Origin: Hyalangium minutum
GTDB taxonomy: Bacteria > Myxococcota > Myxococcia > Myxococcales > Myxococcaceae
Direction of reading: 5' to 3'
Assembly (NCBI RefSeq): GCF_000737315.1
Contig: NZ_JMCB01000006.1
Span: 186,001 to 250,000 of the forward strand
DNA length: 64,000 nucleotides
Position numbers and translations under genes: made by a program. Below, one piece after another: positions 4,538 through 58,106 of this stretch; the first letter of the stretch is position 1, and each line of letters opens with the position of its first letter. Under the pieces are notes generated by a model. That model did no database searches. It was not told the DNA's origin and worked only from the letters and a program-made list of their open reading frames with translations.

Positions 4538-4723
4538 GGCGGGGATCCTCCAACACAGACATCGTACGTCAGTGACACGGCAGGCTTCCCCTCGGAAACA
4601 CGCGAGACATGAATCACAGTCACCGTGAAAAAGGCCGTTCATCCTCTCTCTTTTCCAAGGGCGCGCGGTGTCCGTGATTACCCAGCGCGTGAACCCGGCC
4701 CTCCCGCCTAGCCTGTGCGGGAC

Positions 4724-20695: not shown

Positions 20696-22010
<1,315 letters not shown>

Positions 22011-22027
<17 letters not shown>

Positions 22028-22943
22028 CGCCAAGACCGGGTCGAAGACGTTCACGTGGCTCGTCACCCTCGCGGCGGCGGGCCACCTCGTCTTCGTCACC
22101 GCGATGGGGAGGCTGCGGTGGGAGCACGCCGCGGCCGACCTGTTGCTTGCGGGGCTGGCTTGGGCCGGCCCCGCGCCGCGGCGTTTTCTCCAAGGCGGCT
22201 TCCCGCTGTGGCTCACCGGCATGCTGCTGGACAACCAGTGGCTGTGGCTGGGCCTGCGCGGCCGCGTCCACACCGGGGACTTGTGGGAGCTGGAGCGTGT
22301 GCTCTTCCCGTGCCCGGACGGCACCACCTGGCCTGCGTACTTCGCCACGCGCACCCACGCGGTGCTCGATTTCTTCTGCGGCTTCTCCTACGCGGCCTAC
22401 CTCTACGAAGTCTTCGGACTGGCGCTGTTGTTCTTCTTCCGCAAGCACCCGCGCTTCGCGACCATGTGCTGGGCCTTCTGCCTGCTGAACGCCATGGGCG
22501 TGGTGACGTACATGCTCTACCCCGCGGCGCCTCCCTGGTACGTGATGGCGTACGGCCCCGGTCCCGCGGACCTCACGGCTCCACCGAGCCCCGCCGGCAC
22601 CGCGCGCTTCGACGCGCTGATGGGCATCAGCTACTTCGCGAAGTTCTACGCCCGCAACCCCAATGTCTTCGGGGCCATGCCCTCGCTGCACGCCGCCTAC
22701 CCGACCCTGGTCGTCTGGCAGTCGTGGGGGTTGGGCCGGAGCTGGCGCGTGGGCACCATTGCATTCGCCGCACTGGTGGCGTTCTCCGCCATCTACCTGC
22801 AACACCACTACATCTTGGACGTCGTGGCGGGAGTGGTTGCCGCTCTGGCCGCCTGCTGGATTGTTGAGTACGCCCTCGTCCGGCGTGAATCTCCAGCTTC
22901 CGCGACCGTCCCCGTCATGCCTGGAGGCGACAGCCGTGCTTGA
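22011..22943 (+). CDS. Aur1-like inositol phosphorylceramide synthase (PAP2_3 superfamily)
   Basis: YPAAPPWY, NVFGAMPSLHAAY and QHHYILD match the Aur1/LPT catalytic domains; multi-pass membrane protein; start overlaps the ino1 3' end by 17 nt. Confidence 0.85.
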
Positions 22944-24177
22944 AACCCTGATGGCCTGGATCATGGGAGACCTCTCCCCTTCCGCGCGAATCTGGACGGC
23001 GCTCGGCCCGGCGCTGCTCGCGTGTGCCTACTTCATCCTGGGGCTCGTGGCGTTCTGCGTGCGCGTGGCCATCAAGGGCGTGCCGCAGGATGAGGAGACG
23101 CTCAAGCGCGGCAGCACCATCCTGGTGGGCATGTTCCTGCGCCACTACTTCTTCTGGGTCACCCAGCCCCTGTGGAAAGTGATTTACCGCTCGGGGCTGC
23201 CGGCCAACGCGCTGTCCATGCTGTCGGGCCTGCTGGGCGTGTCCTCGGGCGTGGCGGTGGCGGCGGGGCGCTTCACGCTGGGCGGCTGGCTCTTCCTGGC
23301 CTCCGGCATTCTGGACGTGATGGACGGGCGCATCGCCCGCATCCGCAAGCAGGCCAACCCGGCCGGCGCGGCGCTGGACTCGGTGCTGGACCGGTACGTG
23401 GACTCGGCCATGCTGATGGGCCTGGCCTGGTACTACCGGGACAACTGGGTGCTGCTGCCGGTGCTGGTGGCGTTCCTGGGCACCTCGCTGGTGCCGTACG
23501 TGCGCGCCCGCGGCGAGGGCCTGGGCATCAACATCCGCGGCGGCGCCATGCAGCGCCTGGAGCGGGTGCTCTTCCTGGGCGTGGGCGTGGCGCTGGCGCC
23601 CATCTTCGAGGCCATCTGGTTCCCCGAGCAGAAGCACCCCATGCACTGGCTGGCGGTGGTGGGCATCGTCTTCGTGGCCATCATGAGCAACGTGACGGCG
23701 TTCTCGCGGTTCCGGGCGCTCGTCAACGCGCTGGCGCCGCCTCCTCCTACGAGCCGCAAGCGCTCGGGGCTGGCAATCCTGGGCCTCAACGCGCTGGCGG
23801 GCGCGGTGGCCACGGGCGTGGACTTCGTGTCCGTGCTGGGAATGGTGGAGAAGCTGAGCTTCACGCCCGTCATCGCCACGGCGCTGGGGTGCGTGCTGGG
23901 TGGGGTGGTGAACTACTCGATGAACCGGCTGCTGACATTCCGCAGCCAGAGCGCGGTGGCGCCGCAGCTTGCCCGTTATACGTTGGTGAGCGCGACAAGC
24001 GCGCTGCTCAACGCGGGGGGTGTGGCGTTGCTCACGCTGCACCCGCAATTGGCGTACACGCTGGGATGGTGGTTGGCTCGAGGGGCGGTGTACTTCGCGT
24101 GGAACCTCCCCCTCCAGCGGGACTACGTCTTCAATGACCCGCCGGAGGCGCTCATGGAGCGCCCTCATGCGGCATGA
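22936..24177 (+). CDS. CDP-alcohol phosphatidyltransferase (probable PIP/PI synthase) fused to a GtrA-like domain
   Basis: Signature DVMDGRIAR..GAALDSVLDRY; C-terminal four-helix GtrA pattern ATGVDF..GGVVNYSMNRLLTF..LARY; GGAGG RBS then GTG overlapping the upstream stop. Confidence 0.9.
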   Translation: MLETLMAWIMGDLSPSARIWTALGPALLACAYFILGLVAFCVRVAIKGVPQDEETLKRGSTILVGMFLRHYFFWVTQPLWKVIYRSGLPANALSMLSGLLGVSSGVAVAAGRFTLGGWLFLASGILDVMDGRIARIRKQANPAGAALDSVLDRYVDSAMLMGLAWYYRDNWVLLPVLVAFLGTSLVPYVRARGEGLGINIRGGAMQRLERVLFLGVGVALAPIFEAIWFPEQKHPMHWLAVVGIVFVAIMSNVTAFSRFRALVNALAPPPPTSRKRSGLAILGLNALAGAVATGVDFVSVLGMVEKLSFTPVIATALGCVLGGVVNYSMNRLLTFRSQSAVAPQLARYTLVSATSALLNAGGVALLTLHPQLAYTLGWWLARGAVYFAWNLPLQRDYVFNDPPEALMERPHAA

Positions 24178-25150: not shown

Positions 25151-25186
25151 GGAGAGGGGTATGGCGTCGGCGGACAGAGGTGCGCC

Positions 25187-25804: not shown

Positions 25805-25873
25805 CAGAGACATTCCCCCCCGCATAAAGGTCTGGCTGCGGTCTGAGAGTTCCCTGCTAAAGAGGTCGTGCGT

Positions 25874-26554
25874 ATGAGCCGTTCCTACCTCCGCCATCAA
25901 TCCGGCCGCATGTTCGAGAACAACTTTCTCGAGGCCTGCTCGAGAGTGCACCCATCGGTGCCGTTCCTCTTCTACATCCCGCTGACGCTGGGCTTGTATG
26001 CCTGGTCTCTCTACGGGGGAAAGACGACGCTGGGGTACAGCGCGCTGTTCGTGCCGCTGGGCGTGCTGACGTGGCTTGGCATGGAGTACAGCCTCCACCG
26101 CTACTTCTTCCACTGGGAGGGCAACGGTCCGTTCACGCGGCGGGTGCATGAGATTACCCACGGCTACCACCACAAGTACCCGGACGACGCGGACCGGCTG
26201 GTGATGCCGCTGGGCGCGAGCATCCCGCTGGCCATCGTGATTGGCGGACTGCTGTGGCTGGTGGGCCAGCCGGTGGCGACGATTCCGTACTTCCTGGGCA
26301 TCGTCTGGGGCTACCTGGTGTACGACTTCCTCCACTGGTCCACGCACCACCGCACGCCGCGCACGGCGTGGGGCAAGGCGCTGCGCGCGCACCACATGGC
26401 GCACCACTTCGCCACGCCGGATCGCAACTTCGGCATCAGCAACATGTGGGTGGACATCCTGGTGGGCAGCGGTGGCCGCCGCCCCAAGCGGACCGAGCAG
26501 CCGGAGCAGCCGGAGGGCCAGCGCCCCGAGGTGACCTCCGGCGTGACGGAGTAG
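25874..26554 (+). CDS. Scs7/FA2H-like fatty acid (sphingolipid) alpha-hydroxylase without a cytochrome b5 domain
   Basis: His boxes EYSLHRYFFH, HGYHHKYP, YDFLHWSTH, HHMAHH; RLVMP; SRVHP start motif. Confidence 0.9.
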   Translation: MSRSYLRHQSGRMFENNFLEACSRVHPSVPFLFYIPLTLGLYAWSLYGGKTTLGYSALFVPLGVLTWLGMEYSLHRYFFHWEGNGPFTRRVHEITHGYHHKYPDDADRLVMPLGASIPLAIVIGGLLWLVGQPVATIPYFLGIVWGYLVYDFLHWSTHHRTPRTAWGKALRAHHMAHHFATPDRNFGISNMWVDILVGSGGRRPKRTEQPEQPEGQRPEVTSGVTE

Positions 26555-31722: not shown

Positions 31723-31809
31723 ACACCTGCTTCCAGAAACGAGGCAGGCACTTGGACTCCTGTTTGGGCAGCATGAACTCTCTGCCCCCAAGAGCCGGTT
31801 GTGGGTGGC

Positions 31810-33507
31810 ATGCGTTTCTTCTCCGCCTCCCTGCTCTCTGTGCTCGTCGCGGGCACTGTCTCCGCCGCGCCCGCGGTCTGGACTGAAGGCCCGCTCCTCA
31901 AAGTGGGTCCCTCGACACCGGCCCAGAACCTCGCGCCCGCTCGCCTCTTGGCGGCTCGCAACGAGTTCGAGTCCTTCCAGATCGTCATCCGCGGGGAGGC
32001 CCCCGTCTCCGGCGTTCGCGCGAAGGTCGGCGAACTGACTGGCCCCCATGGCGCGAAGATCCCTCAGTCGAATGTGCGCCTCTACCGCGAGGCGCTCATC
32101 AACGTCACCACGCCATCGGGCGCGATCGGCGCCAAGGGGCGCTTTCCGGATGGCCTCATCCCAGATGTGGACGAGGTGGACGGCCAGATGCGCTCCGCTT
32201 TCCCCTTCGATATTCCCGCGGGTGAGGCGCACGCCCTCTGGGTGGATGTCCTCGTGCCCCTGGATGCACCGGCCGGCCTCTACACCGGCACCCTCCAGGT
32301 CTCCGCGGACGGGCTCGACACCCAGGTCCCCGTGGAGCTCGAGGTCCTCGGCTTCACCCTGCCCTCCACCCCAACGCTCTCGACGGCCTTCCGCGCCTGG
32401 CCCGCGTTCGTCTGCCTCGCTCACACGGGCACGGCCGACTGCGGGAGCCCCGAGACGGCCATCGAGCTGCTCTCGAAGTACGCGCGGCTTGCGCTCGATC
32501 ACCGCATCTCGCTCTCGAACCTCTTCGTCCTGCGCCGCGATCCCCAAGACACCGGAGTGGTGCTCGGCAAGAACGGCGAGGACTGGTCGGGCTTCGATAC
32601 GGCTTTCAGCCCGCTCCTGAACGGCACCGCGGCGACACAGCTCACCGGCGCGAAGCTCACCGCTGTCGAGTATGGCTGGGAACTCTCCCCCGAGGCGCTC
32701 GCGTCCTATGGCCAGCACGCCCGTGACAAGGGCTTTTTGGACCGCGTCTTCGACTACACCGCCGACGAGCCTCCTTATGGAAGCAAGTGGGAGGACATCG
32801 CGCCCCGGTCCGCCATCGTCCACGCCGCCGTCCCGGACATGCGCACGCTCGTCACCACGAACGTCAACGCCGCCACCGACAACAAGCTCGCGGACAGCCT
32901 CGACATCCTCGTGCCCGTCGTGAACCACATGGATGCACCCTTCGCCCCGTTCGCCGGCAATCAGCGGCCTCGCTACGAGGACTTCACCCGCCGGGGCGGA
33001 GAGCTCTGGCTGTACCAGAGCTGCATGAGCCACGGCTGCTCGTTCGGCGGCGCGGAGGAGGGCGCGTCCTGGCCGAGCTACATGGTCGATGTCTCCGCGC
33101 CTCGCAACCGCGCCATGCAGTGGGTCGACTTCGCGTACGGCGCGACGGGCGAGCTCTATTACGAGACCGTGCTCGCCTATGACCGTGACCCGTGGGCGGA
33201 CCAGTTCACCTTCAGCGGCAACGGCGATGGCACGCTGCTCTACCCCGGCAAGCCTTCGAAGATCGGCGGCAGCTCCGAGGTCCCCGTGCCCTCGCTGCGG
33301 CTCAAGCACATCCGCGACGGCATCGAGGACTACGAGTACCTGACCCTGCTGGCGAAGCTGGGGGACCGGGCGCTCGCGGAGAAGCTCGCGCGAGAGGTCG
33401 TCCCCACGGCCCACCGCATCAGCGAGAACCCGAACGTCATCCTCGAGGCGCGCCGCACCGCAGGCCGCCGGATCGCGGAGCTCAGCGCCCAGGCCGCTCC
33501 GGGCTGA
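31810..33507 (+). CDS. Secreted DUF4091/GH123-like glycoside hydrolase
   Basis: Signal peptide; AARNEFESFQ, ADEP, GNGDGTLLYPG, SLRLKHIRDGIEDYEYL. Confidence 0.85.
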   Translation: MRFFSASLLSVLVAGTVSAAPAVWTEGPLLKVGPSTPAQNLAPARLLAARNEFESFQIVIRGEAPVSGVRAKVGELTGPHGAKIPQSNVRLYREALINVTTPSGAIGAKGRFPDGLIPDVDEVDGQMRSAFPFDIPAGEAHALWVDVLVPLDAPAGLYTGTLQVSADGLDTQVPVELEVLGFTLPSTPTLSTAFRAWPAFVCLAHTGTADCGSPETAIELLSKYARLALDHRISLSNLFVLRRDPQDTGVVLGKNGEDWSGFDTAFSPLLNGTAATQLTGAKLTAVEYGWELSPEALASYGQHARDKGFLDRVFDYTADEPPYGSKWEDIAPRSAIVHAAVPDMRTLVTTNVNAATDNKLADSLDILVPVVNHMDAPFAPFAGNQRPRYEDFTRRGGELWLYQSCMSHGCSFGGAEEGASWPSYMVDVSAPRNRAMQWVDFAYGATGELYYETVLAYDRDPWADQFTFSGNGDGTLLYPGKPSKIGGSSEVPVPSLRLKHIRDGIEDYEYLTLLAKLGDRALAEKLAREVVPTAHRISENPNVILEARRTAGRRIAELSAQAAPG

Positions 33508-40788: not shown

Positions 40789-42477
40789 ATGCTGAAGCCA
40801 CGTCGCAAGCGCTGGCCCTGGTTGCTCGCTGGGCTGGTCGTCCTGGGAGTTACCTACATGCTGCGCCCTGCTCCCCCCAAGGGACGCCCTGCGGATCCTC
40901 CGTATCTCACCTTCTTCCTGGTGGATGGCCTGTCCCAGGAGGTGTTCCAGCGGGAGTTGGAAGCCGGGCGCCTGCCAAACTTCTCCCGGCTCATCTCCGA
41001 GGGCCTCTATGTGGAGGACGGCATCGCTGCCTTCCCGAGCATGACGGGCTACGGCTTCTACCCCTTCATCACCGGGCAGGATGCGGTGCGCAGCGGCGTG
41101 CTGGGCCTGCGCTGGTTCCGGCGCGAGGCCCCCGAGGGCAACTTCCGCGCCTACGTGGGCCGCACCAACGTGATGATGAACGAGGACTTCGCCGCCGAGC
41201 CTCGCACGCTCTTCGAGTGCTTCCCGGGGCAGCACAGCTTCTCGGTGAACAGCTACGCCAACCGCGGCGTGGTGCGGAACGAGAAGCTCGGCTGGGGCTT
41301 CAGCATGGCCAAGTACCAGGAGAAGTACCCGCTCATCCGGTTCCTGGGGGGCACGCCGTGGCTGGGGCCTCGCTTCATCCCGGACTGGTACGGCGCCGAG
41401 ACGCAGGTGCTGGAGCTGGCGCTGGAGGACCTGGCCGACAAGCCCAAGGTGCAGTGGGTCACCTTCGCCAGCCCGGACGGCCGCAACCACATCGTCGGCA
41501 CGGACGACACGTACGTGAAGCTGGTGCGCCATATCGACTCGCTCATCGGCCGTTACCGCGAGGAGAGCCAGCGCCTAGGCCAGGAGGAGCACCGCCTGTA
41601 CGCCGTCATCTCGGACCACGGCGTCACCGACGTGCACAAGAACGTGGATCTGCGGGTGGCGCTGGGCACGGCGGGGCTGCGCGCCTGGCGCGGCGAGGCC
41701 ACCCACCTGCGCCAGAGCCGCCTGAATGATCCGATCTCCACCTGGGCGGACACGGACGTCGTCCTCGCGGTGAACGGCAACACGATGAACTACGTGTACC
41801 TGCGCAACCCGGCCGCCCAGGGCGAGCAGGCGTGGCGCACGCAGCCCGCGCCGGGCACGGCCTTCCAGCTGCCTCCGCACCAGGGCGGCGCGCCCGTGGA
41901 CGTGGTGAAGGTGCTGCGCGAGGCAGAGGGCGTGGAGCTGGTGGTGACCCGCGCCGACGCCGCCGGACAGGTGCGCGTCTTCTCGCGCACGGGCGAGGGC
42001 CGCATCACCCCGAGTGAGGGTGGGCTCTCCTACTCCTGCGAGGGCGAGGATCCCCTGGGCTACGCGCAAGGCGAGGCCAGCCGGGTGCTGTGCGACGGCC
42101 GTCCGCGCTCGGATCGCGACTGGCTGAAGGCCACCCACGCCCTGGGCTTTCCGGACGCGGTGGTGCGGCTACACCGGCTGATGTCGGCGCCGGACGTGGC
42201 GGACCTCGTGGTGACGGCGGCGCTCGGTTACGACTTGGCGGCCGACTACGAGCTGGTGGTGGGCAACTACCGGGGCGGCCACGGAGGCCTGCGCGCGGAT
42301 CAGCTCCGCGTGCCGTACATCCTCTCTGGCCCTGGAGTGCCGATGGGCCAGCGACTGGCCACGGCCCGGGCCGAGGACATCGGGGCAACAGTGCTGCGCC
42401 TGGCCGGCTGCCCGCCCGCCGAGCAGCGGGCCGGCGAGGATTTGATCCCGGCCGTGGCCACGCCCGCTCCCCCCTGA
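40789..42477 (+). CDS. Alkaline phosphatase superfamily nucleotide pyrophosphatase/phosphodiesterase, membrane-anchored
   Basis: N-terminal TM anchor; FLVDG, AFPSMT, DGRNH, ISDHG, GGHGG metal-ligand motifs. Confidence 0.88.
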   Translation: MLKPRRKRWPWLLAGLVVLGVTYMLRPAPPKGRPADPPYLTFFLVDGLSQEVFQRELEAGRLPNFSRLISEGLYVEDGIAAFPSMTGYGFYPFITGQDAVRSGVLGLRWFRREAPEGNFRAYVGRTNVMMNEDFAAEPRTLFECFPGQHSFSVNSYANRGVVRNEKLGWGFSMAKYQEKYPLIRFLGGTPWLGPRFIPDWYGAETQVLELALEDLADKPKVQWVTFASPDGRNHIVGTDDTYVKLVRHIDSLIGRYREESQRLGQEEHRLYAVISDHGVTDVHKNVDLRVALGTAGLRAWRGEATHLRQSRLNDPISTWADTDVVLAVNGNTMNYVYLRNPAAQGEQAWRTQPAPGTAFQLPPHQGGAPVDVVKVLREAEGVELVVTRADAAGQVRVFSRTGEGRITPSEGGLSYSCEGEDPLGYAQGEASRVLCDGRPRSDRDWLKATHALGFPDAVVRLHRLMSAPDVADLVVTAALGYDLAADYELVVGNYRGGHGGLRADQLRVPYILSGPGVPMGQRLATARAEDIGATVLRLAGCPPAEQRAGEDLIPAVATPAPP

Positions 42478-42633: not shown

Positions 42634-45153
42634 ATGGCTTCGGATCCGACAACGCCCGCCGGCTGGCGGGGACGTCTTGAGCAGCGCCTCGGCGGGCTGG
42701 CGGACTACAACTACCGCCACCCCTGGCTAGCGCTCGCCATTGCCCTGGCGCTGAGCGTGCTGGGGGTCTTCTTCGCGCGGGGACTGTCGCTTGATGCGAA
42801 CCTGGTGAGCCTGCTTCCCCAGTCCTTCCAGAGCGTGAAGGATCTGCAGGAGCTGGAGGAGCGCTTCGGCGGGCTCGGGTGGGTGGCCGTGGTAGGCGAG
42901 GGGGCGGACCCCGAAGCCCTGCGCCGCTTCGCGGACGATCTGGCGCCCCAGCTGGAGGCCTTGCCTGACATCCGCTTCGTGGAGTCGAAGCGCCCCGGGC
43001 CCTTCCTCCAGGAGCACGCGCTCTACTTCCTCTCCTTGGAGGATCTGCTGCAGGTGGAGCAGCGCATCGACGCGCGCCTCACGTACGAGAAGCAGCGCGC
43101 CAACCCGCTCTATGTCCCGCTGGTGGACGAGCCCGTGCCCTCGCTGGACTTCTCGGACCTGGAGGCGAAGTACGGCGCGGGCAGCGTGCGCAGGCTCTCG
43201 GGCCCCACGGGGGGAGAATACTATCTGGATCCGGTGGCGCGCCGTGTGGTGCTGCTGGCCAAGCCCGAGGGCATCTCCGCGGACCTGGACTTCTCCAAGC
43301 GCGTCGTCGGCGAGGTGGAGAAGCTGCTGGCCGCGCAGGACCTGTCCAAGTACGGGCCGGACTTCCACACGGCCATCACTGGTACCTTCCAGAAGAAGCT
43401 GGATCAACAGAAGCAGATCGGCCGGGACATCGCGGTGTCCTCGGCGGTGGCGGGCGTGCTGCTGCTGATCTACCTGCTGCTGCACTTCCGCAGCGCGCTC
43501 GCGGTGGCGGTGGTGCTGGCGCCGGTAGGCATGGGCCTGGCGTGGACGTACGGGCTGGTGGGCGTGGCGTACGGGCGGGTGAACCTGCTCACGGGCTTCC
43601 TGGGCGCCATCCTCGGAGGTCTCGGCATCGAGCACGGCATCCACCTGCTGGGGCGCTACCTCTATCTGCGCGGCCAGAAGTGGCAGGCGGAGGCGGCCAC
43701 GCGCGAGGCCTTCACGCACACGGGCAGCGCGGCGCTCACCTCGGCGCTCGTGGCGGCGCTCACCTTCTTCCTGCTGGGCACCTCGCACTTCCGCGCGTTC
43801 CGTGAGTTCGGCGTCATCGCCGGCTTCGGCATGCTGCTCATGGTGCTGGCCTACGTGCTGGTGCTGCCCGCGGTGCTGGGGCTGGCAGCGAAGCTGGGCT
43901 GGAAGCCCGGCCCGGGCGCCACGAAACACCAGCGCTCTCCGCTGGGCCGCCTGCTGGTGCGGCTGCACCGCCCCCTCACCGTGGTGTCGATGGTGGTCAT
44001 CGCCCTGCTGGTGGCGAACGTGGGCCGCGTGCGCTTCAACTACAACTTCGGCTCGCTGGCGGATCAGCACCTGCCCTCCTTCGTGCTGGACCGGCAGGTG
44101 ACGCAGCTGATTGGCTACTCGCAGTCTCCTCTGGTGATGCTGCCCCACAGCCCGGCGGAGGAGAGTGCCGTGGTGGAGGAACTGCACGCGAACCAGGCCC
44201 GTCTGGGCGAGCACTCCACGGTGGACTTCATCGCCTCGCTGGACACGCTGGTGCCGCGGGACCAGGTGAAGAAGCAGGAAGTGCTCCGCCGCCTCCAGAC
44301 CCTGCTGGAAGATGTGCCCGAGGGGCAGCTCGACGCCCAGCAACGCGAGCAGCTCGCGGAGCTGCGCCAGGCGACGCGGGCCGAGCCCTTCACCCTCGAG
44401 CAACTGCCTGCCTCCATGCGCCGGCCCTTCACGGACCTGAGCGGCCAGAGCCACTTCGTGCTGGTGTACCCGCGGGTGAGCCTGGATGACGGGCAGGGCA
44501 TCCGCGCCCTGGCCCGCGAGCTGCGCCAGGTGAAGACGCCCAGCGGCGGGCCCGTCGCCGTGGCGGGCGAGCCCATGGTGCTCGCGGACATCCTCAACAT
44601 GGTCACGCGCGAGTCGCCGTTCATTCTCATCGGCTCGCTGGTGGCGGTGCTGCTGGCCATGTGGGTGACTTTGGGGAGCCTGCGCCTGGCGCTGCTGTGC
44701 CTGACGCCCACCGTGGTGTCGCTGTTCGCGCTGGTGGGGCTGATGCCGCTGCTCAACGTGCAGTTCAACTACCTCAACATCCTCGTTATCCCCGTGCTCA
44801 TCGGGACGACCGTGGATGCGGGCGTCCACCTGCTCACGCAGCTCGTGTCACCGGAGAGCGACTTCGTCTCCGTCTACTCAGAGACGGGCCGCGCCATCAC
44901 GGGCGGTCTGCTGACGAGCGCCTTGGGCTTCGGCGCGCTCTTCCTCGCCGATCACCCGGGCCTCAACTCCATTGGCACGCTGGCCAACCTGGGCTTCGGC
45001 GTGAATCTGCTGGTGATGCTGGTGGCCTTCCCCGCGCTCCTGCTGCTGCTGTCCGAGCGGCGGCGGCGCAAGCGGCTCCAGCAGCAGGCCCATGCCCGGG
45101 ACGAGGCGCTCCCTCCCCCGGCCCGGCCGAGCGACGCTCCCTCGGCGAGCTGA
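42634..45153 (+). CDS. MMPL/RND family lipid transporter (HpnN-like), copy 2
   Basis: Same architecture as copy 1; shared QDLSKYGPxFxTAxxGTF, GLGIEHGIHLLGRY, GTTVDAGVHL and HPGLNSIG blocks. Confidence 0.92.
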   Translation: MASDPTTPAGWRGRLEQRLGGLADYNYRHPWLALAIALALSVLGVFFARGLSLDANLVSLLPQSFQSVKDLQELEERFGGLGWVAVVGEGADPEALRRFADDLAPQLEALPDIRFVESKRPGPFLQEHALYFLSLEDLLQVEQRIDARLTYEKQRANPLYVPLVDEPVPSLDFSDLEAKYGAGSVRRLSGPTGGEYYLDPVARRVVLLAKPEGISADLDFSKRVVGEVEKLLAAQDLSKYGPDFHTAITGTFQKKLDQQKQIGRDIAVSSAVAGVLLLIYLLLHFRSALAVAVVLAPVGMGLAWTYGLVGVAYGRVNLLTGFLGAILGGLGIEHGIHLLGRYLYLRGQKWQAEAATREAFTHTGSAALTSALVAALTFFLLGTSHFRAFREFGVIAGFGMLLMVLAYVLVLPAVLGLAAKLGWKPGPGATKHQRSPLGRLLVRLHRPLTVVSMVVIALLVANVGRVRFNYNFGSLADQHLPSFVLDRQVTQLIGYSQSPLVMLPHSPAEESAVVEELHANQARLGEHSTVDFIASLDTLVPRDQVKKQEVLRRLQTLLEDVPEGQLDAQQREQLAELRQATRAEPFTLEQLPASMRRPFTDLSGQSHFVLVYPRVSLDDGQGIRALARELRQVKTPSGGPVAVAGEPMVLADILNMVTRESPFILIGSLVAVLLAMWVTLGSLRLALLCLTPTVVSLFALVGLMPLLNVQFNYLNILVIPVLIGTTVDAGVHLLTQLVSPESDFVSVYSETGRAITGGLLTSALGFGALFLADHPGLNSIGTLANLGFGVNLLVMLVAFPALLLLLSERRRRKRLQQQAHARDEALPPPARPSDAPSAS

Positions 45154-52709: not shown

Positions 52710-53324
52710 TCAGACGTCGAAGAAGTCCACTTCGCCGCTCTCCAGGCTGTACTCGGCGCCCACCACGCGCAGGCCCTGCTCCAGCACCAGGCGCTCCAGC
52801 AGCGCCGAGCCGTGCTTGAGGTGGCTCACCGAGGCGCGGACGTTGGCGCGCACCGCCTCGTGGATCAGCCGCGGCCGGTCCTTGGCCAGCTCCGTGTGCA
52901 CCAGCGCCTCGATGGCGGGCCGCACCCGGCTCACGATGGAGAGCAGGTTGGGCGAGCGCGGCACGTCCGGCTTCTCGATGACTTCGAGCGTCGTATCGAT
53001 GGCGCCACAGAACGTGTGGCCCATCACCACCACGAGCCGGGTGCCGAAGGCCTCGGCGGCGAACTCGACGCTGCCCACCTGCGAGGGCGCGACGATGTTG
53101 CCCGCCACGCGGATGACGAACAGGTCTCCAAGCCCCTGATCAAAGACGATCTCCGCGGGCACCCGCGAGTCCGAGCACCCGAGCACGATGGCGAAGGGCT
53201 TCTGGCCTTGCACCAGCTCGTCCCGCCGGAGCTGGCTCATCATGGCCTCGGTGCTGCGGAGGTGGTTGACGAACCTCCGGTTGCCGTCCTTCAGCCGCTG
53301 CAGCGCCTCCTGGGGATCCACCAT
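52710..53324 (-). CDS. Beta-class carbonic anhydrase
   Basis: LGCSDSRVP, FDQGLGDLFVIRVAGN, GHTFCGA zinc ligands. Confidence 0.95.
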   Translation of the reverse strand: MVDPQEALQRLKDGNRRFVNHLRSTEAMMSQLRRDELVQGQKPFAIVLGCSDSRVPAEIVFDQGLGDLFVIRVAGNIVAPSQVGSVEFAAEAFGTRLVVVMGHTFCGAIDTTLEVIEKPDVPRSPNLLSIVSRVRPAIEALVHTELAKDRPRLIHEAVRANVRASVSHLKHGSALLERLVLEQGLRVVGAEYSLESGEVDFFDV

Positions 53325-53500
53325 GCCGACTCCTCTACCCCAGGGCCCCGCCCTGCCGCGAGGAGAACCGCGCCCCCGTTTGTGTCGCCCCCGGGACGGG
53401 ACACGGGCCTCGCTGTCCCCACGGGCTCGGGGTAGCCTGCGCCCCCTTCATCCCTCAGCCGCCGGCCGTGGCAGCGCGGACCGGCGCAGGAGCCCGCCGC

Positions 53501-55315
53501 ATGTCGTCCCCGAACCACTACAAGCCCAACCTGCGCGACCTGTACTTCAACCTCTTTGAGTTCCTCGACATCGGCCGCACCTCGCTGGGCAAGGGTCCCT
53601 TCGGCGACATCGACGAGACGGCGGCGCGGCAGACGCTGGAGACATTCGCGCAGGTGTGCGTGAACGAGGTCGCCCCCAGCTTCGCCGAGTCCGAGCACGC
53701 GCCGCCCGTGCTGGAGAACGGCGAGGTGAAGCTGCCGCCGCTGCTCAAGAAGGCCATCTCCGCCTACTACGACGCGGGGATGAACCAGCTGGAGCTGCCT
53801 CCTCACATGGGAGGCCTGGGCGCGCCGCCGTCGCTGGCCTGGGGCGCCTTCGAGCTGCTGGTGGGCGCCAGCGCGCCGGTGGCCTTCTACACGCTGGGCA
53901 CGCTCGTCTCGCGCGTCATCGACCGGCTGGGCACCGAGGCCCAGAAGAAGCGCTTCCTGCCCGCCATCACCGAGCAGCGGTGGATTGGCACCATGGTGCT
54001 CACCGAGCCGGACGCCGGCAGCGACGTGGGCGCCGCGCGCGCCAAGGCGCGGCACGTGGGCGGGGACGTGTGGGAGATTGAAGGCGTCAAGCGCTTCATC
54101 ACCAGCGCGGAGCATGACGCCTCCGAGAATATCATCCACATGGTGTTGGCGCGGCCCGAGGGCGCGGGGCCGGGCACCAAGGGCCTGTCGCTGTTCATCG
54201 TCCCGAAGTTCTGGGTGGAGGAGGACGGCAAGCTGGGCGAGCGCAACGGGGTGGTGTGCACCAAGCTCGAGAAGAAGATGGGCCTCAAGGGCTCCGTCAC
54301 CTGCGAGCTGACGTTCGGGGACGGCAAGCCGGCGCGCGGCCTGCTGCTCGGCGAGGTGCACGAGGGCATCCGGCAGATGTTCCACATCATCGAGCAGGCG
54401 CGCATGGCGGTGGGCATGAAGTCCATGGCCACGCTGTCCACCGCGTACCTGAACGCGCTGGAGTTCACCCAGGACCGCAAGCAGGGCTCGGACCTGCTCG
54501 CCGCGCGCGACAAGACGGCCCCGCGCGTGGCCATCATCCGCCACCCGGACGTGCGCCGCATGCTGATGGCGCAGAAGGCCCACGCCGAGGGCATGCGCGC
54601 CCTGGCCCTCTTCACCGCCTCCATCCAGGACCAGGTGGAGATCAAGGGCGGCCACCGCGCGCTGGAGGCCGCGGAGCTGGACGCGCTCAACGACTTGCTG
54701 CTGCCGCTGGTGAAGGGCTACTGCTCGGAGAAGGCGTACGAGCTGCTGGCGGTGTCGCTGCAGTGCTTCGGCGGCTCGGGGTACCTGGCGGACTACCCGG
54801 TGGAGCAGTACATCCGCGACCAGAAGATCGACACGCTCTACGAGGGCACCACGCACATCCAGGCGCTGGACCTCATCATGCGCAAGCTGGCGCGCGACGG
54901 CGGGGCCACCTTCCAGGGGCTGCTGGGGCAGATCCGGCAGACGGCCGAGTCGGACCTGGGTGGCAAGGAGCTGGAGACGGAGCGCAAGGCGCTGGGCGAG
55001 GCGCTGGGCGCGCTGGAGACGATGCTCGGCGCGCTCATGGGCAAGCTGGGCGAGTCGCTCTACCACGTGGGCCTGCAGGGCAACCGGGTGCTGGCCTCGG
55101 TGGCGGAAGTGGTGATCGGCTGGCTGCTGGTGCGCCACGCGGCGGTGGCGCTGGAGCGCACCAAGGTGAACCCGGGCGACAAGGCCTTCTACGCGGGCAA
55201 GCTCGCCTCGGCGCGCTGGTTCTGCAAGGAGGTGCTGCCGAACATCGCGCACCATGCGCGTATGGTGGAGCAGGGCAGCCTGGACCTGATGGAAGTGCCC
55301 GACGAGGCCTTCTAG
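53501..55315 (+). CDS. Acyl-CoA dehydrogenase (FadE5-like, about 600 aa)
   Basis: HYKPNLRD, TMVLTEPDAGSD, GVKRFITS, GTKGLSLF, EKKMG, IDTLYEGTTHIQ. Confidence 0.95.
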   Translation: MSSPNHYKPNLRDLYFNLFEFLDIGRTSLGKGPFGDIDETAARQTLETFAQVCVNEVAPSFAESEHAPPVLENGEVKLPPLLKKAISAYYDAGMNQLELPPHMGGLGAPPSLAWGAFELLVGASAPVAFYTLGTLVSRVIDRLGTEAQKKRFLPAITEQRWIGTMVLTEPDAGSDVGAARAKARHVGGDVWEIEGVKRFITSAEHDASENIIHMVLARPEGAGPGTKGLSLFIVPKFWVEEDGKLGERNGVVCTKLEKKMGLKGSVTCELTFGDGKPARGLLLGEVHEGIRQMFHIIEQARMAVGMKSMATLSTAYLNALEFTQDRKQGSDLLAARDKTAPRVAIIRHPDVRRMLMAQKAHAEGMRALALFTASIQDQVEIKGGHRALEAAELDALNDLLLPLVKGYCSEKAYELLAVSLQCFGGSGYLADYPVEQYIRDQKIDTLYEGTTHIQALDLIMRKLARDGGATFQGLLGQIRQTAESDLGGKELETERKALGEALGALETMLGALMGKLGESLYHVGLQGNRVLASVAEVVIGWLLVRHAAVALERTKVNPGDKAFYAGKLASARWFCKEVLPNIAHHARMVEQGSLDLMEVPDEAF

Positions 55316-55421
55316 AGGAATTCCGCGGGGTTGGCGGCGGGCACGTCCCTCAGTGAACATTGACTTGCCCGTCAGTACGACGGTAGAGCCTCCTGCCCGG
55401 AACGCCTGATCGGGAGGATCG

Positions 55422-56471
55422 ATGTCGTCGAGGACAGCCCCAACAGACTACGAGGTCGTGCAGAACGCCGAGCCGCACCCGGCTCGCACGGCCGCCATCC
55501 TCAGAGCCCACCCGGAGGTGCGCAAGCTGTTCGGGCGCACCCCGGCCACCGCGCTGTTCGTGCCCATCATCCTGGTGATGCAGTTCGGCACGGCGTGGAT
55601 GGTGAAGGACCAGCCGTGGTGGGTCATCGTCCTGGCGGCGTACACGCTGGGCGCCATCGTCAACAACACCTGCTACGTCATCATCCACGAGGCCACGCAC
55701 AGCCTCATCTTCAAGGGCCGCATGGGCAACCTGCTGGCGGCCATCGGGGCGGATCTGGTGCACGTCATCCCCTCGGCGGTGACGTTCACGCGCTTCCACC
55801 TGGTGCACCACCGGCACCAGGGCGAGTTCGACCTGGACGCGGACCTGCCCTCGCACGCCGAGGCGAAGCTGGTGGGCAACAGCACCCTCATGAAGGCGCT
55901 GTGGGTCACCTTCTTCCCGCTGATGCAGGCGCTGCGCATGCCGCGCTTCTCCAAGCTGGTCAGCTTCTGGGAGCCGTGGACGGTGGTGAACGCGCTGGCG
56001 GTGTTCGCGGTGGACGCGGCCGTGTTGTTCCTGATGGGGCCCTGGGCGTTCCTCTACATCGTCCTGAGCATCTTCTTCTCCATCGGCCTGCACCCGCTGG
56101 GCGGCCGGCTCATCCAGGAGCACTTCATCGTGGCCCACCCGCAGGAGACGTACTCCTACTATGGGCCGTGGAACCTCACCGCGCTGAACGTGGGCTACCA
56201 CAACGAGCACCATGACTTCTCCGCGGTGCCGTGGAACAAGCTGCCGCAGGTGCGCGCGCTGGCGCCCGAGCACTACGACACGCTGGTGTGGCACCGCTCG
56301 TGGACGGGGCTGCTGGTGAAGTTCATCTTTGATCCGTCGCTGAGCCTCTACAGCCGCATCACCCGCCCCGGTCCGCAGAAGCGCAAGGTGCTCACGGGCG
56401 GCGTGGGCCGCGTGCCGGACTCGGTGGAGTCGCTGCAGAAGCCGCCTTCCGCCGTCGACTCGGCCGCCTGA
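55422..56471 (+). CDS. DES1/DEGS-like sphingolipid delta-4 desaturase or C4-hydroxylase
   Basis: EPHxxRxxxILxxHPE N-terminus, His boxes HEATH, HLVHH, HNEHH, and GLHPLGG..EH..ETYSYYGPWN..NVGYHNEHHDF. Confidence 0.88.
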   Translation: MSSRTAPTDYEVVQNAEPHPARTAAILRAHPEVRKLFGRTPATALFVPIILVMQFGTAWMVKDQPWWVIVLAAYTLGAIVNNTCYVIIHEATHSLIFKGRMGNLLAAIGADLVHVIPSAVTFTRFHLVHHRHQGEFDLDADLPSHAEAKLVGNSTLMKALWVTFFPLMQALRMPRFSKLVSFWEPWTVVNALAVFAVDAAVLFLMGPWAFLYIVLSIFFSIGLHPLGGRLIQEHFIVAHPQETYSYYGPWNLTALNVGYHNEHHDFSAVPWNKLPQVRALAPEHYDTLVWHRSWTGLLVKFIFDPSLSLYSRITRPGPQKRKVLTGGVGRVPDSVESLQKPPSAVDSAA

Positions 56472-56516
56472 GTGCTGCGATAGTCTCGCGCCTCAACACC
56501 ACTGGAGAGGAACTCG

Positions 56517-56927
56517 ATGGGTCTTGCAGAGAAGCGCGCAGTGGCGGCTTACCAGAAGGACAAGTGGCCGACGTGGCAGCAGAAGCTGAACGCCATCACT
56601 GGCTTTGAGCCCACCTACGAGATCGCGTGGGATCAGCTGGCCAAGGAGGGCTACTCGGCCGAGTACCCCACCATGTTCGACTACAACTTCTTCGAGCCCT
56701 TGGAGATCGCGCTGAAGTCGATCTGCCAGGACGACCTGGGCAAGGACGCCCTCAAGGAGAAGATCAAGAAGGTCTCCATCACCAGCACCCGGAGCTGGTG
56801 CTCGCTGGAGGTCAAGATCGAGGGCGACACGCTCAAGCTCGACGCGGATCCTTCCTATGAGCGCTCGAACGGGAGCGTGACCTCCTACGCGGACAAGATG
56901 CGCCTGGCGCTCGAGGCCGCGCTGTAG
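56517..56927 (+). CDS. Conserved hypothetical protein (MGLAEKRA family)
   Basis: GGAGAGGA RBS; strong GC3 bias; 136 aa with DDLGKDALK motif. Confidence 0.8.
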   Translation: MGLAEKRAVAAYQKDKWPTWQQKLNAITGFEPTYEIAWDQLAKEGYSAEYPTMFDYNFFEPLEIALKSICQDDLGKDALKEKIKKVSITSTRSWCSLEVKIEGDTLKLDADPSYERSNGSVTSYADKMRLALEAAL

Positions 56928-56935
56928 CTCCGGAC

Positions 56936-57349
56936 TCAGCCCCGGTTCGGCTCTTGGGAGACCGGGAGCCGGACCATGCGGTCCATCAAGTGCTCAAGGG
57001 CCTTCGCTGGGTCCTCGCACAGCCCCGAGTGGAACGGGGACGTCTGAATCACGGTGCTGCGCGGCGCGATGAGCCAGTGCCACCGCTCCTTCTGAGGCAG
57101 CTGCCCAATGGGCCCCGCGGTCCGGCCTCCCGCGCAGATGCGGGGAATGGCCTCCAGGTGGGCTCTCACGCCTTCCACATCCACCTCGGGCGCGAGCGCG
57201 AGAAGGCGCCGCTCGTCCAGCTCCACCTGGGCTCCGAGGAAGCGGTGGGTGAGGCAGTAGAGGATGACGCCCGCGTTGATGAACTCGCCGCGCTCCACGC
57301 GCGGCACGACGCGGATGATGGCGTAATCAAAAGAGCTGGGCGCGGGCAC
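56936..57349 (-). CDS. DUF3037 domain protein
   Basis: FDYAIIRVVPRVERGEFINAGV; RWHWLIAPRSTVIQTSPFHSG. Confidence 0.9.
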   Translation of the reverse strand: MPAPSSFDYAIIRVVPRVERGEFINAGVILYCLTHRFLGAQVELDERRLLALAPEVDVEGVRAHLEAIPRICAGGRTAGPIGQLPQKERWHWLIAPRSTVIQTSPFHSGLCEDPAKALEHLMDRMVRLPVSQEPNRG

Positions 57350-58106
57350 GCTCCGCCTCCTCGATGAACTTCGGGGCCGCCTCGAGCCGCCCGCGCAGCC
57401 ACGCCAGGTACGCCTCGCGGTGGGCCTGCGGGGTGGAGAAGGCCTCCTCGTTGCCCAGCCACGCGTCGGGGATGAGCGCCACCGTGCGCTCCAGCACCTC
57501 GGGCGTCAGCCGGGTGCGCAGCGTGGCCTCCGTCGCGCGCAGCGCCGTGGCCCAGCGCAGCAGCACATGGTCCTTGATGGGAGCGAAGGCCGTCCCCGCG
57601 CGCTCCAGGTACCCGTCCCACGAGTGGTGGAAGTACATGGACGCGCCGTGGTCGATGAGCCAGAGCGCCTTGTGCCAGTGCAGCATGTTGGGGTTCTTCG
57701 GGGTCCGGTCCACGTTCGTCACGTAGGCATCGAAGCAGACGATCTCCGAGGCCTCCTGAGCGGAGGGCGGCGGGCCGGCGACCGGGTCGAACGTGATGGA
57801 GCCCGGCAGGTAGTCCATCGCCAGGTTCAGCCCTCCGCTGGCCTTGATGAGGTCACGGATCTCTCCGTCCGGCTCGGCGCGGCCCAGCACGGGGTCCAGG
57901 TGCATGAACACAAGCTCCGGGACGCGCAGGCCCATGGCACGGGCCAGTTCGCCCGCCACCAGCTCGGCGATGAGCACCTTGAGCCCCTGCCCCGCGCCTC
58001 GGAACTTCAGCACGTACAGCCCGGAGTCCTCCGCTTCGACGATGGCGGGCATCGAGCCCCCCTCGCGCAGCGGCGTCACGTACCTGGTCGCCGTCACCGT
58101 CCTCAT
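57327..58106 (-). CDS. HipA-like (HipA_2) kinase
   Basis: TPLREGGSMP, YVLKFRGAGQG, ELVAGELA, NVDRTPKNPN, LIDHG; 3' end overlaps the DUF3037 start by 23 nt. Confidence 0.88.
   Translation of the reverse strand: MRTVTATRYVTPLREGGSMPAIVEAEDSGLYVLKFRGAGQGLKVLIAELVAGELARAMGLRVPELVFMHLDPVLGRAEPDGEIRDLIKASGGLNLAMDYLPGSITFDPVAGPPPSAQEASEIVCFDAYVTNVDRTPKNPNMLHWHKALWLIDHGASMYFHHSWDGYLERAGTAFAPIKDHVLLRWATALRATEATLRTRLTPEVLERTVALIPDAWLGNEEAFSTPQAHREAYLAWLRGRLEAAPKFIEEAERARAQLF

What the first reader, a model, noticed from the sequence alone, without database searches (positions are those of the whole stretch)
55422..56471. Eukaryote-like DES1/DEGS sphingolipid desaturase, completing a dispersed sphingolipid toolkit
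Seen: the DEGS-type N-terminal EPHxxR..ILxxHPE and the ETYSYYG..NVGYHNEHHDF block, beyond generic desaturase His boxes; it follows an acyl-CoA dehydrogenase. Known: DES1 introduces the delta-4 double bond of ceramide and DES2 can C4-hydroxylate; most sphingolipid-making bacteria stop at dihydroceramide. Inference: with the Aur1-, Scs7- and Svf1-like genes, this genome encodes four eukaryote-type sphingolipid-tailoring functions within 36 kb, which bears on the origin of the eukaryotic pathway.
Basis: partly seen in the sequence, partly recalled or inferred. Interest (0 to 1): 0.72.

Follow-up and report, generated by a model that had tools for sequence, protein, structure and literature searches.

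The report
Bacterial-clade sphingolipid DES desaturase gene
The gene is a real, intact member of the DES/DEGS sphingolipid desaturase family in the myxobacterium Hyalangium minutum, but it belongs to a large, little-studied bacterial branch of that family found in hundreds of species, so it is not a specially eukaryote-like gene.

Summary
ORF 55422-56471 (+), 349 aa, has a Shine-Dalgarno sequence, the Lipid_DES N-terminal domain, a FA_desaturase domain, all three His boxes and the quoted motifs. It aligns end to end with vertebrate DES1 (35% identity, E = 2e-66).

The window is from Hyalangium minutum DSM 14724. The closest named relative (88%) is already annotated as a sphingolipid delta-4 desaturase in Stigmatella aurantiaca. 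Homologues with the same architecture occur in at least 585 species-level bacterial genomes from about eight phyla.

In a bootstrapped tree, all bacterial sequences form a clan (81%) that excludes 22 named eukaryotic DES proteins. The window protein scores 482 bits against a bacterial DES profile and 294 against a eukaryotic one. It is no closer to eukaryotes than other bacterial members are. This rules out a generic desaturase and a recent eukaryotic import. The direction of any ancient transfer is unresolved.

An upstream operon of a type characterised in Bacteroides (inositol-phosphate synthase, phosphoinositol-dihydroceramide synthase, PIP synthase, Scs7-like hydroxylase) supplies a plausible substrate. 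No Svf1-like gene could be confirmed. I found no biochemical study of a bacterial DES.

Most likely function: dihydroceramide delta-4 desaturation. This is inferred, not shown.

The parts
55422..56471 (+). DES/DEGS-family membrane desaturase gene (349 aa)
   Evidence: ORF. Pfam Lipid_DES + FA_desaturase. Exact product called in assembly GCA_000737315.1. 88% identical to the S. aurantiaca protein named sphingolipid delta-4 desaturase.
55412..55417 (+). Shine-Dalgarno sequence GGGAGG, four bases upstream of the ATG
   Evidence: Read directly from the sequence.
55440..55544 (+). Lipid_DES N-terminal domain (aa 7-41), containing EPHPAR and ILRAHPE
   Evidence: PF08557, E = 1.3e-10, 41 bits against a cut-off of 23. 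H19 is invariant in 50 bacterial and 22 eukaryotic sequences.
55617..56279 (+). FA_desaturase catalytic domain (aa 66-286)
   Evidence: PF00487, E = 1.2e-26. The AF2 model (pLDDT 80.9) matches membrane di-iron enzymes.
55686..55700 (+). His box 1, HEATH (aa 89-93)
   Evidence: H89 and H93 are conserved in at least 95% of 190 family members.
55797..55811 (+). His box 2, HLVHH (aa 126-130)
   Evidence: H126, H129 and H130 are conserved in at least 95% of 190 members.
56199..56213 (+). His box 3, HNEHH (aa 260-264), preceded by ETYSYYG (aa 242-248)
   Evidence: H260, H263 and H264 are conserved in at least 95%. N261 is shared with DES1-type and invertebrate or protist DES, whereas vertebrate DES2 has M or V.
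53468..55315 (+). Acyl-CoA dehydrogenase directly upstream (106-nt gap; public call starts at 53501). It is a conserved neighbour only in the close Hyalangium/Stigmatella lineage.
   Evidence: Pfam Acyl-CoA_dh_N/M/1/C. Adjacency is kept in L001, L002 and L081 but not in the more distant P0010.
22011..22943 (+). PAP2_3 protein, probable phosphoinositol-(dihydro)ceramide synthase (Aur1/BT_1522-like). It marks inositol sphingolipid synthesis in this organism, the likely source or sink of the DES substrate.
   Evidence: Pfam PAP2_3, E = 1e-25. NCBIfam NF052609 PhinosDhcerSyn, E = 5e-43, below its equivalog cut-off. Public gene call.
20696..22027 (+). myo-inositol-1-phosphate synthase, first gene of the inositol-lipid operon
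   Evidence: Pfam NAD_binding_5 (3.9e-88) and Inos-1-P_synth. Gene call.
22936..24177 (+). CDP-alcohol phosphatidyltransferase (PIP-synthase type) fused to a GtrA-like membrane domain
   Evidence: Pfam. NCBIfam archaetidylinositol phosphate synthase, BT1523-type PIP synthase and PIPSynth hits.
25874..26554 (+). Scs7/FA2H-like fatty acid hydroxylase without a cytochrome b5 domain, last gene of the operon
   Evidence: Pfam FA_hydroxylase, E = 9.6e-15. Best PDB relative is yeast Scs7, E = 7.5e-13. Exact product on record.

Best explanation
The gene encodes an integral-membrane di-iron oxidase of the DES/DEGS family. It belongs to a bacterial branch of that family and has been inherited vertically within the Hyalangium/Stigmatella lineage of myxobacteria. 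Most likely it uses O2 and a separate electron donor (it has no fused cytochrome b5 domain) to remove hydrogens from C4-C5 of the long-chain base of a dihydroceramide. This would convert the iso-branched dihydroceramides of this myxobacterium, or their phosphoinositol derivatives, into delta-4-unsaturated ceramides.

Shown: the gene is intact, it belongs to the family, the catalytic residues are conserved, it sits in a bacterial clade, and an inositol-sphingolipid operon lies in the same 64 kb.

Inferred: the substrate, the regiochemistry (desaturation rather than C4-hydroxylation) and the electron donor.
For: Lipid_DES and FA_desaturase are both above the Pfam gathering scores. The alignment with primate DES1 is colinear over aa 1-315 (35% identity, E = 2e-66), and with rodent DES2 it is 34%. 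H19, H89, H93, H126, H129, H130, H224, H234, H260, H263 and H264 are invariant in all 50 bacterial and 22 named eukaryotic sequences. Box 3 reads HNEHH, as in DES1 and in invertebrate and protist DES, not HM/VEHH as in vertebrate DES2. The AF2 model is confident (pLDDT 80.9, pTM 0.79) and its only meaningful fold matches are membrane di-iron enzymes: a subunit of the chloroplast Ycf2-FtsHi complex, AlkB and SCD1. All 120 best homologues share the two-domain architecture, and the 88% relative in S. aurantiaca is named sphingolipid delta-4 desaturase. The same window carries MIPS, a PI-dihydroceramide-synthase-like PAP2_3 protein, a PIP synthase and an Scs7-like hydroxylase in one operon. The equivalent Bacteroides cluster makes phosphoinositol dihydroceramide (PMC9246714). 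Myxobacteria make sphingolipids, including ceramide phosphoinositol, and have functional FA2H homologues (cited in PMC9246714 and PMC10002949).
Against: I found no biochemical or genetic study of any bacterial DES homologue. DES is not clustered with sphingolipid genes here (29 kb from the inositol operon) or in any of 77 bacterial loci examined. Many carriers (Ignavibacteria, Gemmatimonadota, Acidobacteriota, Verrucomicrobiota) are not established sphingolipid producers, so the bacterial clade may have another substrate. All 50 bacterial sequences have Arg where all 22 eukaryotic ones have His (position 229, in HPxxG[H/R]), so the active-site surroundings may differ. Spt and ceramide synthase genes are not in the window, so I could not confirm them for this genome. 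The DES1-type Asn in box 3 is probably ancestral and is weak evidence for desaturase over hydroxylase activity.
Confidence: 0.6

Rival explanations
1. The enzyme acts on dihydroceramide as a C4-hydroxylase (DES2-like). It would make phytoceramide-type bases, the usual backbone of inositol phosphorylceramides in fungi and plants, with or without desaturase activity.
For: The family includes bifunctional DES2 enzymes (34% identity). The organism has a phosphoinositol-ceramide synthase operon. No Sur2-type base hydroxylase was identified in the window; the only FA_hydroxylase is closest to Scs7.
Against: Box 3 is HNEHH in all 50 bacterial sequences, as in DES1-type enzymes, whereas vertebrate DES2 has HM/VEHH. 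This is a weak discriminator outside vertebrates. The bacterial clade is equally distant from DES1 and DES2, which are a vertebrate duplication (95-98% bootstrap clan).
Confidence: 0.15
2. The bacterial DES clade acts on a different lipid with a similar head region rather than on ceramide. Candidates are sulfonolipids or capnoids, N-acyl amino-alcohol lipids or ether lipids. In that case the family name is misleading for bacteria.
For: The clade is widespread in phyla not known for sphingolipids. No neighbour family is conserved across phyla and no Spt or ceramide synthase gene lies next to DES in 77 loci. Nine positions, including R229 in place of H, separate bacteria from eukaryotes. Here the conserved neighbour is an acyl-CoA dehydrogenase, not a sphingolipid gene.
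Against: The sphingolipid-specific Lipid_DES domain and most family-wide conserved residues are retained. Carriers include known sphingolipid-producing groups (Myxococcota, Bacteroidota). The window itself carries an inositol-sphingolipid operon. The ACAD adjacency is confined to close relatives.
Confidence: 0.2
3. The gene is a recent horizontal acquisition from a eukaryote, a truly 'eukaryote-like' gene in a myxobacterium.
For: The family was first described in eukaryotes. Myxobacteria carry several eukaryote-like lipid genes (PMC13012113, PMC8237579).
Against: The window protein lies within a bacterial clan (81% bootstrap) that excludes all 22 named eukaryotes. It scores 482 against 294 bits for bacterial and eukaryotic profiles. 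Mean identity is 52% to other bacterial phyla and 36% to eukaryotes. GC3 of 0.96 matches the host genome. Synteny is conserved with three related genomes.
Confidence: 0.03

Closest known systems
Eukaryotic sphingolipid delta-4 desaturase DES1/DEGS1 (human DEGS1, Drosophila ifc and similar)
   Same: Same two-domain architecture (Lipid_DES + FA_desaturase), similar length, and a colinear alignment over aa 1-315 at 35% identity. All three His boxes and the additional conserved His residues are present, as are ETYSYYG and HNEHHDF.
   Different: It belongs to a separate bacterial clan. It has Arg instead of the eukaryote-invariant His at position 229, plus eight other clade-specific substitutions. 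It has no N-terminal Met-Gly, the site I recall as myristoylated in DES1. Bacteria generally lack the cytochrome b5 system I recall as the eukaryotic donor, so the redox partner must differ. Its activity has not been tested.
Vertebrate DES2/DEGS2 (bifunctional delta-4 desaturase / C4-monooxygenase)
   Same: Same architecture, 34% identity.
   Different: DES2 has M or V in box 3 (HM/VEHH), whereas the window protein has N. DES1 and DES2 are a vertebrate-level duplication, so the bacterial protein is orthologous to neither in particular.
Annotated but uncharacterised bacterial homologues, e.g. S. aurantiaca 'sphingolipid delta-4 desaturase' (P0005) and 'fatty acid desaturase' entries from Bacteroidota, Ignavibacteria and Dadabacteria
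   Same: 88% identity to the Stigmatella protein and the same gene neighbourhood (ACAD upstream, DUF3037/HipA_2 downstream). 48-57% identity to other phyla, with identical architecture.
   Different: These names are automatic annotations; I found no experimental work on any of them. The window has a 136-aa ORF after DES, where Stigmatella has Fer2 and molybdopterin-oxidoreductase genes.
Bacteroides thetaiotaomicron inositol-lipid cluster BT_1522-BT_1526 (context, not the DES gene)
   Same: The window operon at 20696-26554 has MIPS, a PAP2-type PI-dihydroceramide synthase homologue, a PIP synthase and a GtrA-like membrane module, as in BT_1526, BT_1522, BT_1523 and BT_1524.
   Different: PIP synthase and GtrA are fused into one protein. 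The phosphatase is a dual-specificity PTP type rather than PgpA-like BT_1525. An Scs7-like hydroxylase and an unknown 327-aa protein are added. B. thetaiotaomicron makes dihydroceramide-based lipids, and that paper reports no DES.

Membership tests
DES/DEGS sphingolipid delta-4 desaturase family | N-terminal Lipid_DES domain (PF08557) above the curated threshold | tested here: met
   41 bits against a gathering score of 23, aa 7-41.
DES/DEGS sphingolipid delta-4 desaturase family | Membrane FA_desaturase domain with three His boxes (HX3H, HX2HH, HX2HH) | tested here: met
   PF00487, 94.4 bits. HEATH, HLVHH and HNEHH are invariant across 190 family members.
DES/DEGS sphingolipid delta-4 desaturase family | Full-length colinear homology to named DES1/DES2 proteins | tested here: met
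   35% over aa 1-315, E = 2e-66 with primate DES1; 34%, E = 5e-60 with rodent DES2.
DES/DEGS sphingolipid delta-4 desaturase family | Groups with DES proteins rather than with other desaturase subfamilies | tested here: met
   All 120 best hits carry PF08557 + PF00487. The only other curated hit is CrtW at 23.7 bits against a cut-off of 350. It sits in a clan sister to named eukaryotic DES. No outgroup was included, so the root is unknown.
DES/DEGS sphingolipid delta-4 desaturase family | Eukaryote-invariant His in the HPxxGH motif (window position 229) | tested here: not met
   Arg in the window protein and in 50 of 50 bacterial sequences; His in 22 of 22 named eukaryotes. It has not been established that this residue defines the activity, so I treat it as a clade difference and not as an exclusion.
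DES/DEGS sphingolipid delta-4 desaturase family | Catalyses 4,5-desaturation (or C4-hydroxylation) of dihydroceramide | not testable with these tools
   Needs lipidomics or an enzyme assay. I found no published bacterial example.
DES/DEGS sphingolipid delta-4 desaturase family | The host makes the substrate (sphingolipid pathway present) | tested here: inconclusive
   A PI-dihydroceramide-synthase-like gene and an Scs7-like hydroxylase are in the window, and myxobacteria are reported sphingolipid producers. Spt and ceramide synthase are not in the 64 kb, so I could not check them.
Eukaryotic-origin DES (recent eukaryote-to-bacterium transfer) | Nested within eukaryotic sequences in a phylogeny | tested here: not met
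   The bacterial clan has 81% bootstrap and excludes all 22 named eukaryotes. The protein scores 482 against 294 bits for bacterial and eukaryotic HMMs.
Generic glycerolipid acyl-chain desaturases / CrtW ketolases | Best match to those families and no Lipid_DES domain | tested here: not met
   The Lipid_DES domain is present. CrtW scores 23.7 bits against a cut-off of 350.

The most novel reading that the evidence does not exclude
The bacterial DES clade, together with bacterial PI-ceramide synthases and FA2H/Scs7-like hydroxylases, is the ancestral stock of the eukaryotic ceramide-tailoring enzymes. If so, eukaryotic DEGS arose by an early bacterium-to-eukaryote transfer, and true 4-unsaturated ceramides are made by hundreds of environmental bacterial species, contrary to the view that bacteria stop at dihydroceramide.
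Probability: 0.15. Interest if true: 0.75.

Novelty: new member of a known kind. Interest (0 to 1): 0.4.

Why it matters
Bacterial sphingolipids are generally described as dihydroceramide-based, and I found no bacterial DES enzyme that has been studied. This gene is one member of a large bacterial DES clade: at least 585 species-level genomes, and 493 clusters at 50% identity across the whole family at E <= 1e-30.

The gene sits in a cultured type strain, H. minutum DSM 14724, and has an 88% orthologue in S. aurantiaca, which (from my own knowledge) has been genetically manipulated. One knockout with lipidomics could therefore show whether bacteria make 4-unsaturated or 4-hydroxylated ceramides, or whether the bacterial clade has a new substrate.

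On the origin of the eukaryotic pathway, the result is sobering. Myxobacteria are not specially close to eukaryotes for this gene.

Tried and rejected
(1) Naming the 50%-cluster representatives by exact look-up. All ten were unnamed metagenomic or Logan sequences, so I gave up that route and got named eukaryotes from a profile search instead. Fungi and plants are still missing from the named set.

(2) Guilt by association. I clustered the neighbours of 77 bacterial DES loci and ran Pfam on the recurrent ones. They were lineage-specific neighbours only (aldo/keto reductase, pyruvate:ferredoxin oxidoreductase, multihaem cytochromes, RF3, phytoene/squalene synthase), with no sphingolipid genes.

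(3) Looking for the Svf1-like gene. Pfam at E <= 1 on all unannotated ORFs, NCBIfam, PDB sequence search and the precomputed Pfam hits of the public gene calls all found nothing.

(4) PDB sequence search for a solved DEGS structure found none. The fold search gave only distant di-iron membrane enzymes.

(5) Promoter and terminator scan of 53200-57500. No promoter-like sites, and two terminator-like sites inside the ORF at chance level, so it says nothing about the operon.

(6) Ten literature searches found no paper on bacterial DES enzymology or phylogeny. Lorenzen 2014 and Stankeviciute 2022 were not held.

(8) I rejected the CrtW ketolase reading (23.7 bits against 350).

Full report
OBSERVATION

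GC at the three codon positions is 0.62/0.43/0.96, the pattern of genuine genes in this 69% GC window. A GGGAGG Shine-Dalgarno sequence lies four bases upstream of the ATG. The identical 349-aa product is a called gene in a public assembly.

The translation contains all the quoted motifs: EPHPAR, ILRAHPE, ETYSYYG and NVGYHNEHHDF. Pfam finds the Lipid_DES N-terminal domain (PF08557, aa 7-41, 41 bits against a gathering score of 23) and FA_desaturase (PF00487, aa 66-286, 94 bits against 29.7). The gene upstream (53468-55315) is an acyl-CoA dehydrogenase with all four ACAD domains.

SOURCE ORGANISM

The exact protein is encoded on contig JMCB01000006.1 (1.04 Mb) of assembly GCA_000737315.1. Accession JMCB00000000 is Hyalangium minutum DSM 14724T, a cultured myxobacterium of the Cystobacter/Archangium/Stigmatella family (PMC5441343).

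FAMILY MEMBERSHIP

- The protein aligns colinearly over residues 1-315 with primate DES1 (35% identity, E = 2e-66) and rodent DES2 (34%, E = 5e-60). I fished out these named proteins using a human DEGS1 sequence recalled from memory as bait. Only the returned database sequences were used.
- In an alignment of 190 family members, the eight His of the three boxes (HEATH 89-93, HLVHH 126-130, HNEHH 260-264) are conserved. So are H19, H224 and H234, in all 50 bacterial and all 22 named eukaryotic sequences.
- NCBIfam has no specific model. The only hit is CrtW at 23.7 bits against a cut-off of 350.
- No DEGS structure has been solved.
- An AlphaFold2 model built on a 17-sequence alignment is confident (mean pLDDT 80.9, pTM 0.79). 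Its only significant Foldseek matches are membrane di-iron enzymes: a subunit of the chloroplast Ycf2/Orf2971-FtsHi complex (TM about 0.58), AlkB and SCD1.
- Hydropathy shows four to five hydrophobic stretches flanking the His boxes.

This is a DES-family protein.

HOW EUKARYOTE-LIKE IS IT?

The closest named relative (88% identity) is already called 'sphingolipid delta-4 desaturase' in Stigmatella aurantiaca. All 120 best hits share the two-domain architecture, and many come from Bacteroidota, Ignavibacteria and Dadabacteria at 50-56% identity.

The loci are in Ignavibacteria, Bacteroidota, Acidobacteriota, Gemmatimonadota, Verrucomicrobiota, Dadabacteria and Myxococcota. The Bacteroidota include Saprospiraceae, Chitinophagaceae and the cultured species Chitinophaga filiformis and Flavisolibacter longurius. 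These sit on long bacterial contigs with bacterial neighbours, so they are not eukaryotic contamination.

I assembled 50 bacterial sequences, 22 named eukaryotic DES and 118 unnamed representatives at 50% clustering. The eukaryotes were vertebrate DES1 and DES2, insects, a crustacean, molluscs, a brachiopod, a cnidarian, a hemichordate, a priapulid, a diatom, an oomycete and a EukProt protist.

- In a neighbour-joining tree with 200 bootstraps, the window protein lies in a myxobacterial subclade of 13 sequences (100%).
- That subclade lies inside a clan holding all 50 bacterial sequences plus five unnamed representatives (81%).
- The clan excludes every named eukaryote. An earlier tree without the named invertebrates and protists gave the same picture.

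A check that does not use the tree agrees. The window protein scores 481.9 bits against an HMM built only from non-myxobacterial bacterial DES, and 293.9 bits against an HMM of the named eukaryotes.

Mean identity is 52% to other bacterial phyla and 35.6% to eukaryotes. Other bacterial members average 37.5% to eukaryotes, so the myxobacterial proteins are no closer to eukaryotes than the rest.

Nine alignment positions separate the two groups cleanly. The most notable is Arg229 in 50 of 50 bacterial sequences against His in 22 of 22 eukaryotes, in the HPxxG[R/H] motif.

Conclusion: the gene is neither a recent eukaryotic import nor specifically eukaryote-like. It is a member of a broad bacterial branch of the DES family. 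My tree is unrooted and lacks named fungi and plants, so the direction of any ancient transfer between bacteria and eukaryotes is unresolved.

GENOMIC CONTEXT

The order glgX, carbonic anhydrase (minus strand), ACAD, DES, then DUF3037 and HipA_2 (minus strand) is conserved in two related MAGs and in S. aurantiaca at 82-91% protein identity. The gene is therefore a stable, vertically inherited part of this lineage.

The 136-aa ORF between DES and DUF3037 (56517-56927) is present only in the window. Stigmatella has ferredoxin-like and molybdopterin-oxidoreductase genes there instead.

ACAD is not upstream of DES in a more distant member of the myxobacterial subclade. Across 77 bacterial loci, no neighbour family recurs beyond single lineages, and none is a sphingolipid gene. 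Context therefore neither supports nor contradicts a sphingolipid substrate.

THE 'TOOLKIT'

About 29 kb upstream there is a compact operon with overlapping gene ends:
- myo-inositol-1-phosphate synthase (20696-22027);
- a PAP2_3 protein (22011-22943) whose best NCBIfam match is phosphoinositol dihydroceramide synthase (E = 5e-43, below the equivalog cut-off);
- a PIP-synthase-type CDP-alcohol transferase fused to a GtrA-like domain (22936-24177);
- an unknown 327-aa protein;
- a dual-specificity phosphatase;
- a 226-aa fatty acid hydroxylase (25874-26554) whose best solved relative is yeast Scs7 (E = 7.5e-13), without a cytochrome b5 domain.

This matches, part for part, the B. thetaiotaomicron BT_1522-1526 cluster that makes phosphatidylinositol and phosphoinositol dihydroceramide (PMC9246714). 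M. xanthus is reported to make ceramide phosphoinositol, and myxobacterial FA2H homologues are reported to be functional and tied to sphingolipid formation (cited in PMC9246714 and PMC10002949).

So the 'Aur1-like' and 'Scs7-like' genes are real. They form a known type of bacterial cluster, not a dispersed eukaryotic toolkit. I could not confirm any Svf1-like gene: no Pfam Svf1 hit at E <= 1 in any unannotated ORF, and none in the precomputed annotation of 15.8-36.5 kb.

MECHANISM

What is shown is an intact DES-family di-iron membrane enzyme in an organism with an inositol-sphingolipid operon. What I infer is that it desaturates the C4-C5 bond of dihydroceramide or a derivative.

Box 3 reads HNEHH, as in DES1 and in the invertebrate and protist enzymes. 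Vertebrate DES2 has M or V at that position. This leans towards desaturation over C4-hydroxylation, but only weakly, because Asn is probably the ancestral state.

There is no fused cytochrome b5 domain, so a separate electron donor is needed. From general knowledge of bacterial membrane desaturases, that would be a ferredoxin or flavodoxin system; I did not test this.

The main rivals are C4-hydroxylation (about 0.15) and a non-ceramide substrate for the bacterial clade (about 0.2). The second gains weight from the clade's spread into phyla not known to make sphingolipids, and from the R229 difference.

LITERATURE

Ten full-text searches found no biochemical, genetic or phylogenetic treatment of bacterial DES homologues. 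Two key papers were not held. The library misses most subscription journals, so this is absence of evidence only.

VERDICT

The gene is real and correctly assigned to its family, and a close relative is already annotated as such. It is a new member of a known kind.

The interest lies less in this gene than in the large, apparently unstudied bacterial DES clade it represents, and in the fact that a cultured type strain carries it next to a recognisable inositol-sphingolipid operon. That makes a direct test easy. Interest 0.4.

Noticed in passing
window 20696-26554 (+): Inositol-lipid operon resembling Bacteroides BT_1522-1526, with three differences. PIP synthase and the GtrA-like membrane protein are fused into one 413-aa protein. 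The phosphatase is a dual-specificity PTP type instead of PgpA-like. An Scs7-like hydroxylase lacking a cytochrome b5 domain is appended.
   Followed up: partly
window 24167-25150 (+), 26678-27526 (+), 27547-28236 (+), 29937-30473 (+): Four genes in or just after the inositol operon have no Pfam, NCBIfam or PDB match.
   Followed up: partly
window 56517-56927 (+): A 136-aa ORF with host-like codon bias (GC3 0.92) lies between DES and DUF3037 and is a called gene in the assembly. It is absent from the same position in two related MAGs and in S. aurantiaca, and matches no family.
   Followed up: partly
window 31801-33507 (+): A GH123-family glycoside hydrolase lies a few genes downstream of the inositol-sphingolipid operon, after a PhoD-like phosphatase and a class-V aminotransferase. 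From memory, the founding GH123 enzyme is a glycosphingolipid beta-N-acetylgalactosaminidase.
   Followed up: no
window 38144-40615 (-), 40789-42477 (+), 42634-45153 (+): Two MMPL/RND-type transporters with sterol-sensing-domain similarity flank a type I phosphodiesterase/nucleotide pyrophosphatase. This may be a lipid export module.
   Followed up: no
window 9360-10478 (+): A FeeM-like N-acyl amino acid synthase (GNAT) domain is fused to a cyclic-nucleotide-binding domain.
   Followed up: no
window 3425-5281 (-): A 618-aa protein with a terpene synthase family 2 C-terminal metal-binding domain.
   Followed up: no
window 56936-57349 (-) and about 57327-58106 (-): A DUF3037 and HipA_2-like gene pair lies downstream of DES and is conserved in the same position in S. 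aurantiaca and related MAGs.
   Followed up: partly
DES alignment, window protein residue 229 (nt 56106-56108): Every bacterial DES examined (50 of 50) has Arg where every named eukaryotic DES (22 of 22) has His, in the HPxxG[R/H] motif next to the conserved His224 and His234. Eight further positions also separate the two groups.
   Followed up: partly
L080 8041-8964 (Archangium sp. MAG) and protein P0392 (oomycete Thraustotheca clavata): A second, divergent DES type (51% identity) is attributed to an Archangium MAG and falls outside the Hyalangium/Stigmatella subclade. The oomycete protein is 658 aa and consists of two tandem DES units.
   Followed up: no
L085 and L086, 11108-12379 (-): In one bacterial lineage (P0118; taxonomy not determined), a UDP-glycosyltransferase lies convergent to DES and a PhyH-family dioxygenase lies upstream. 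This hints at glycolipid tailoring in that lineage.
   Followed up: no
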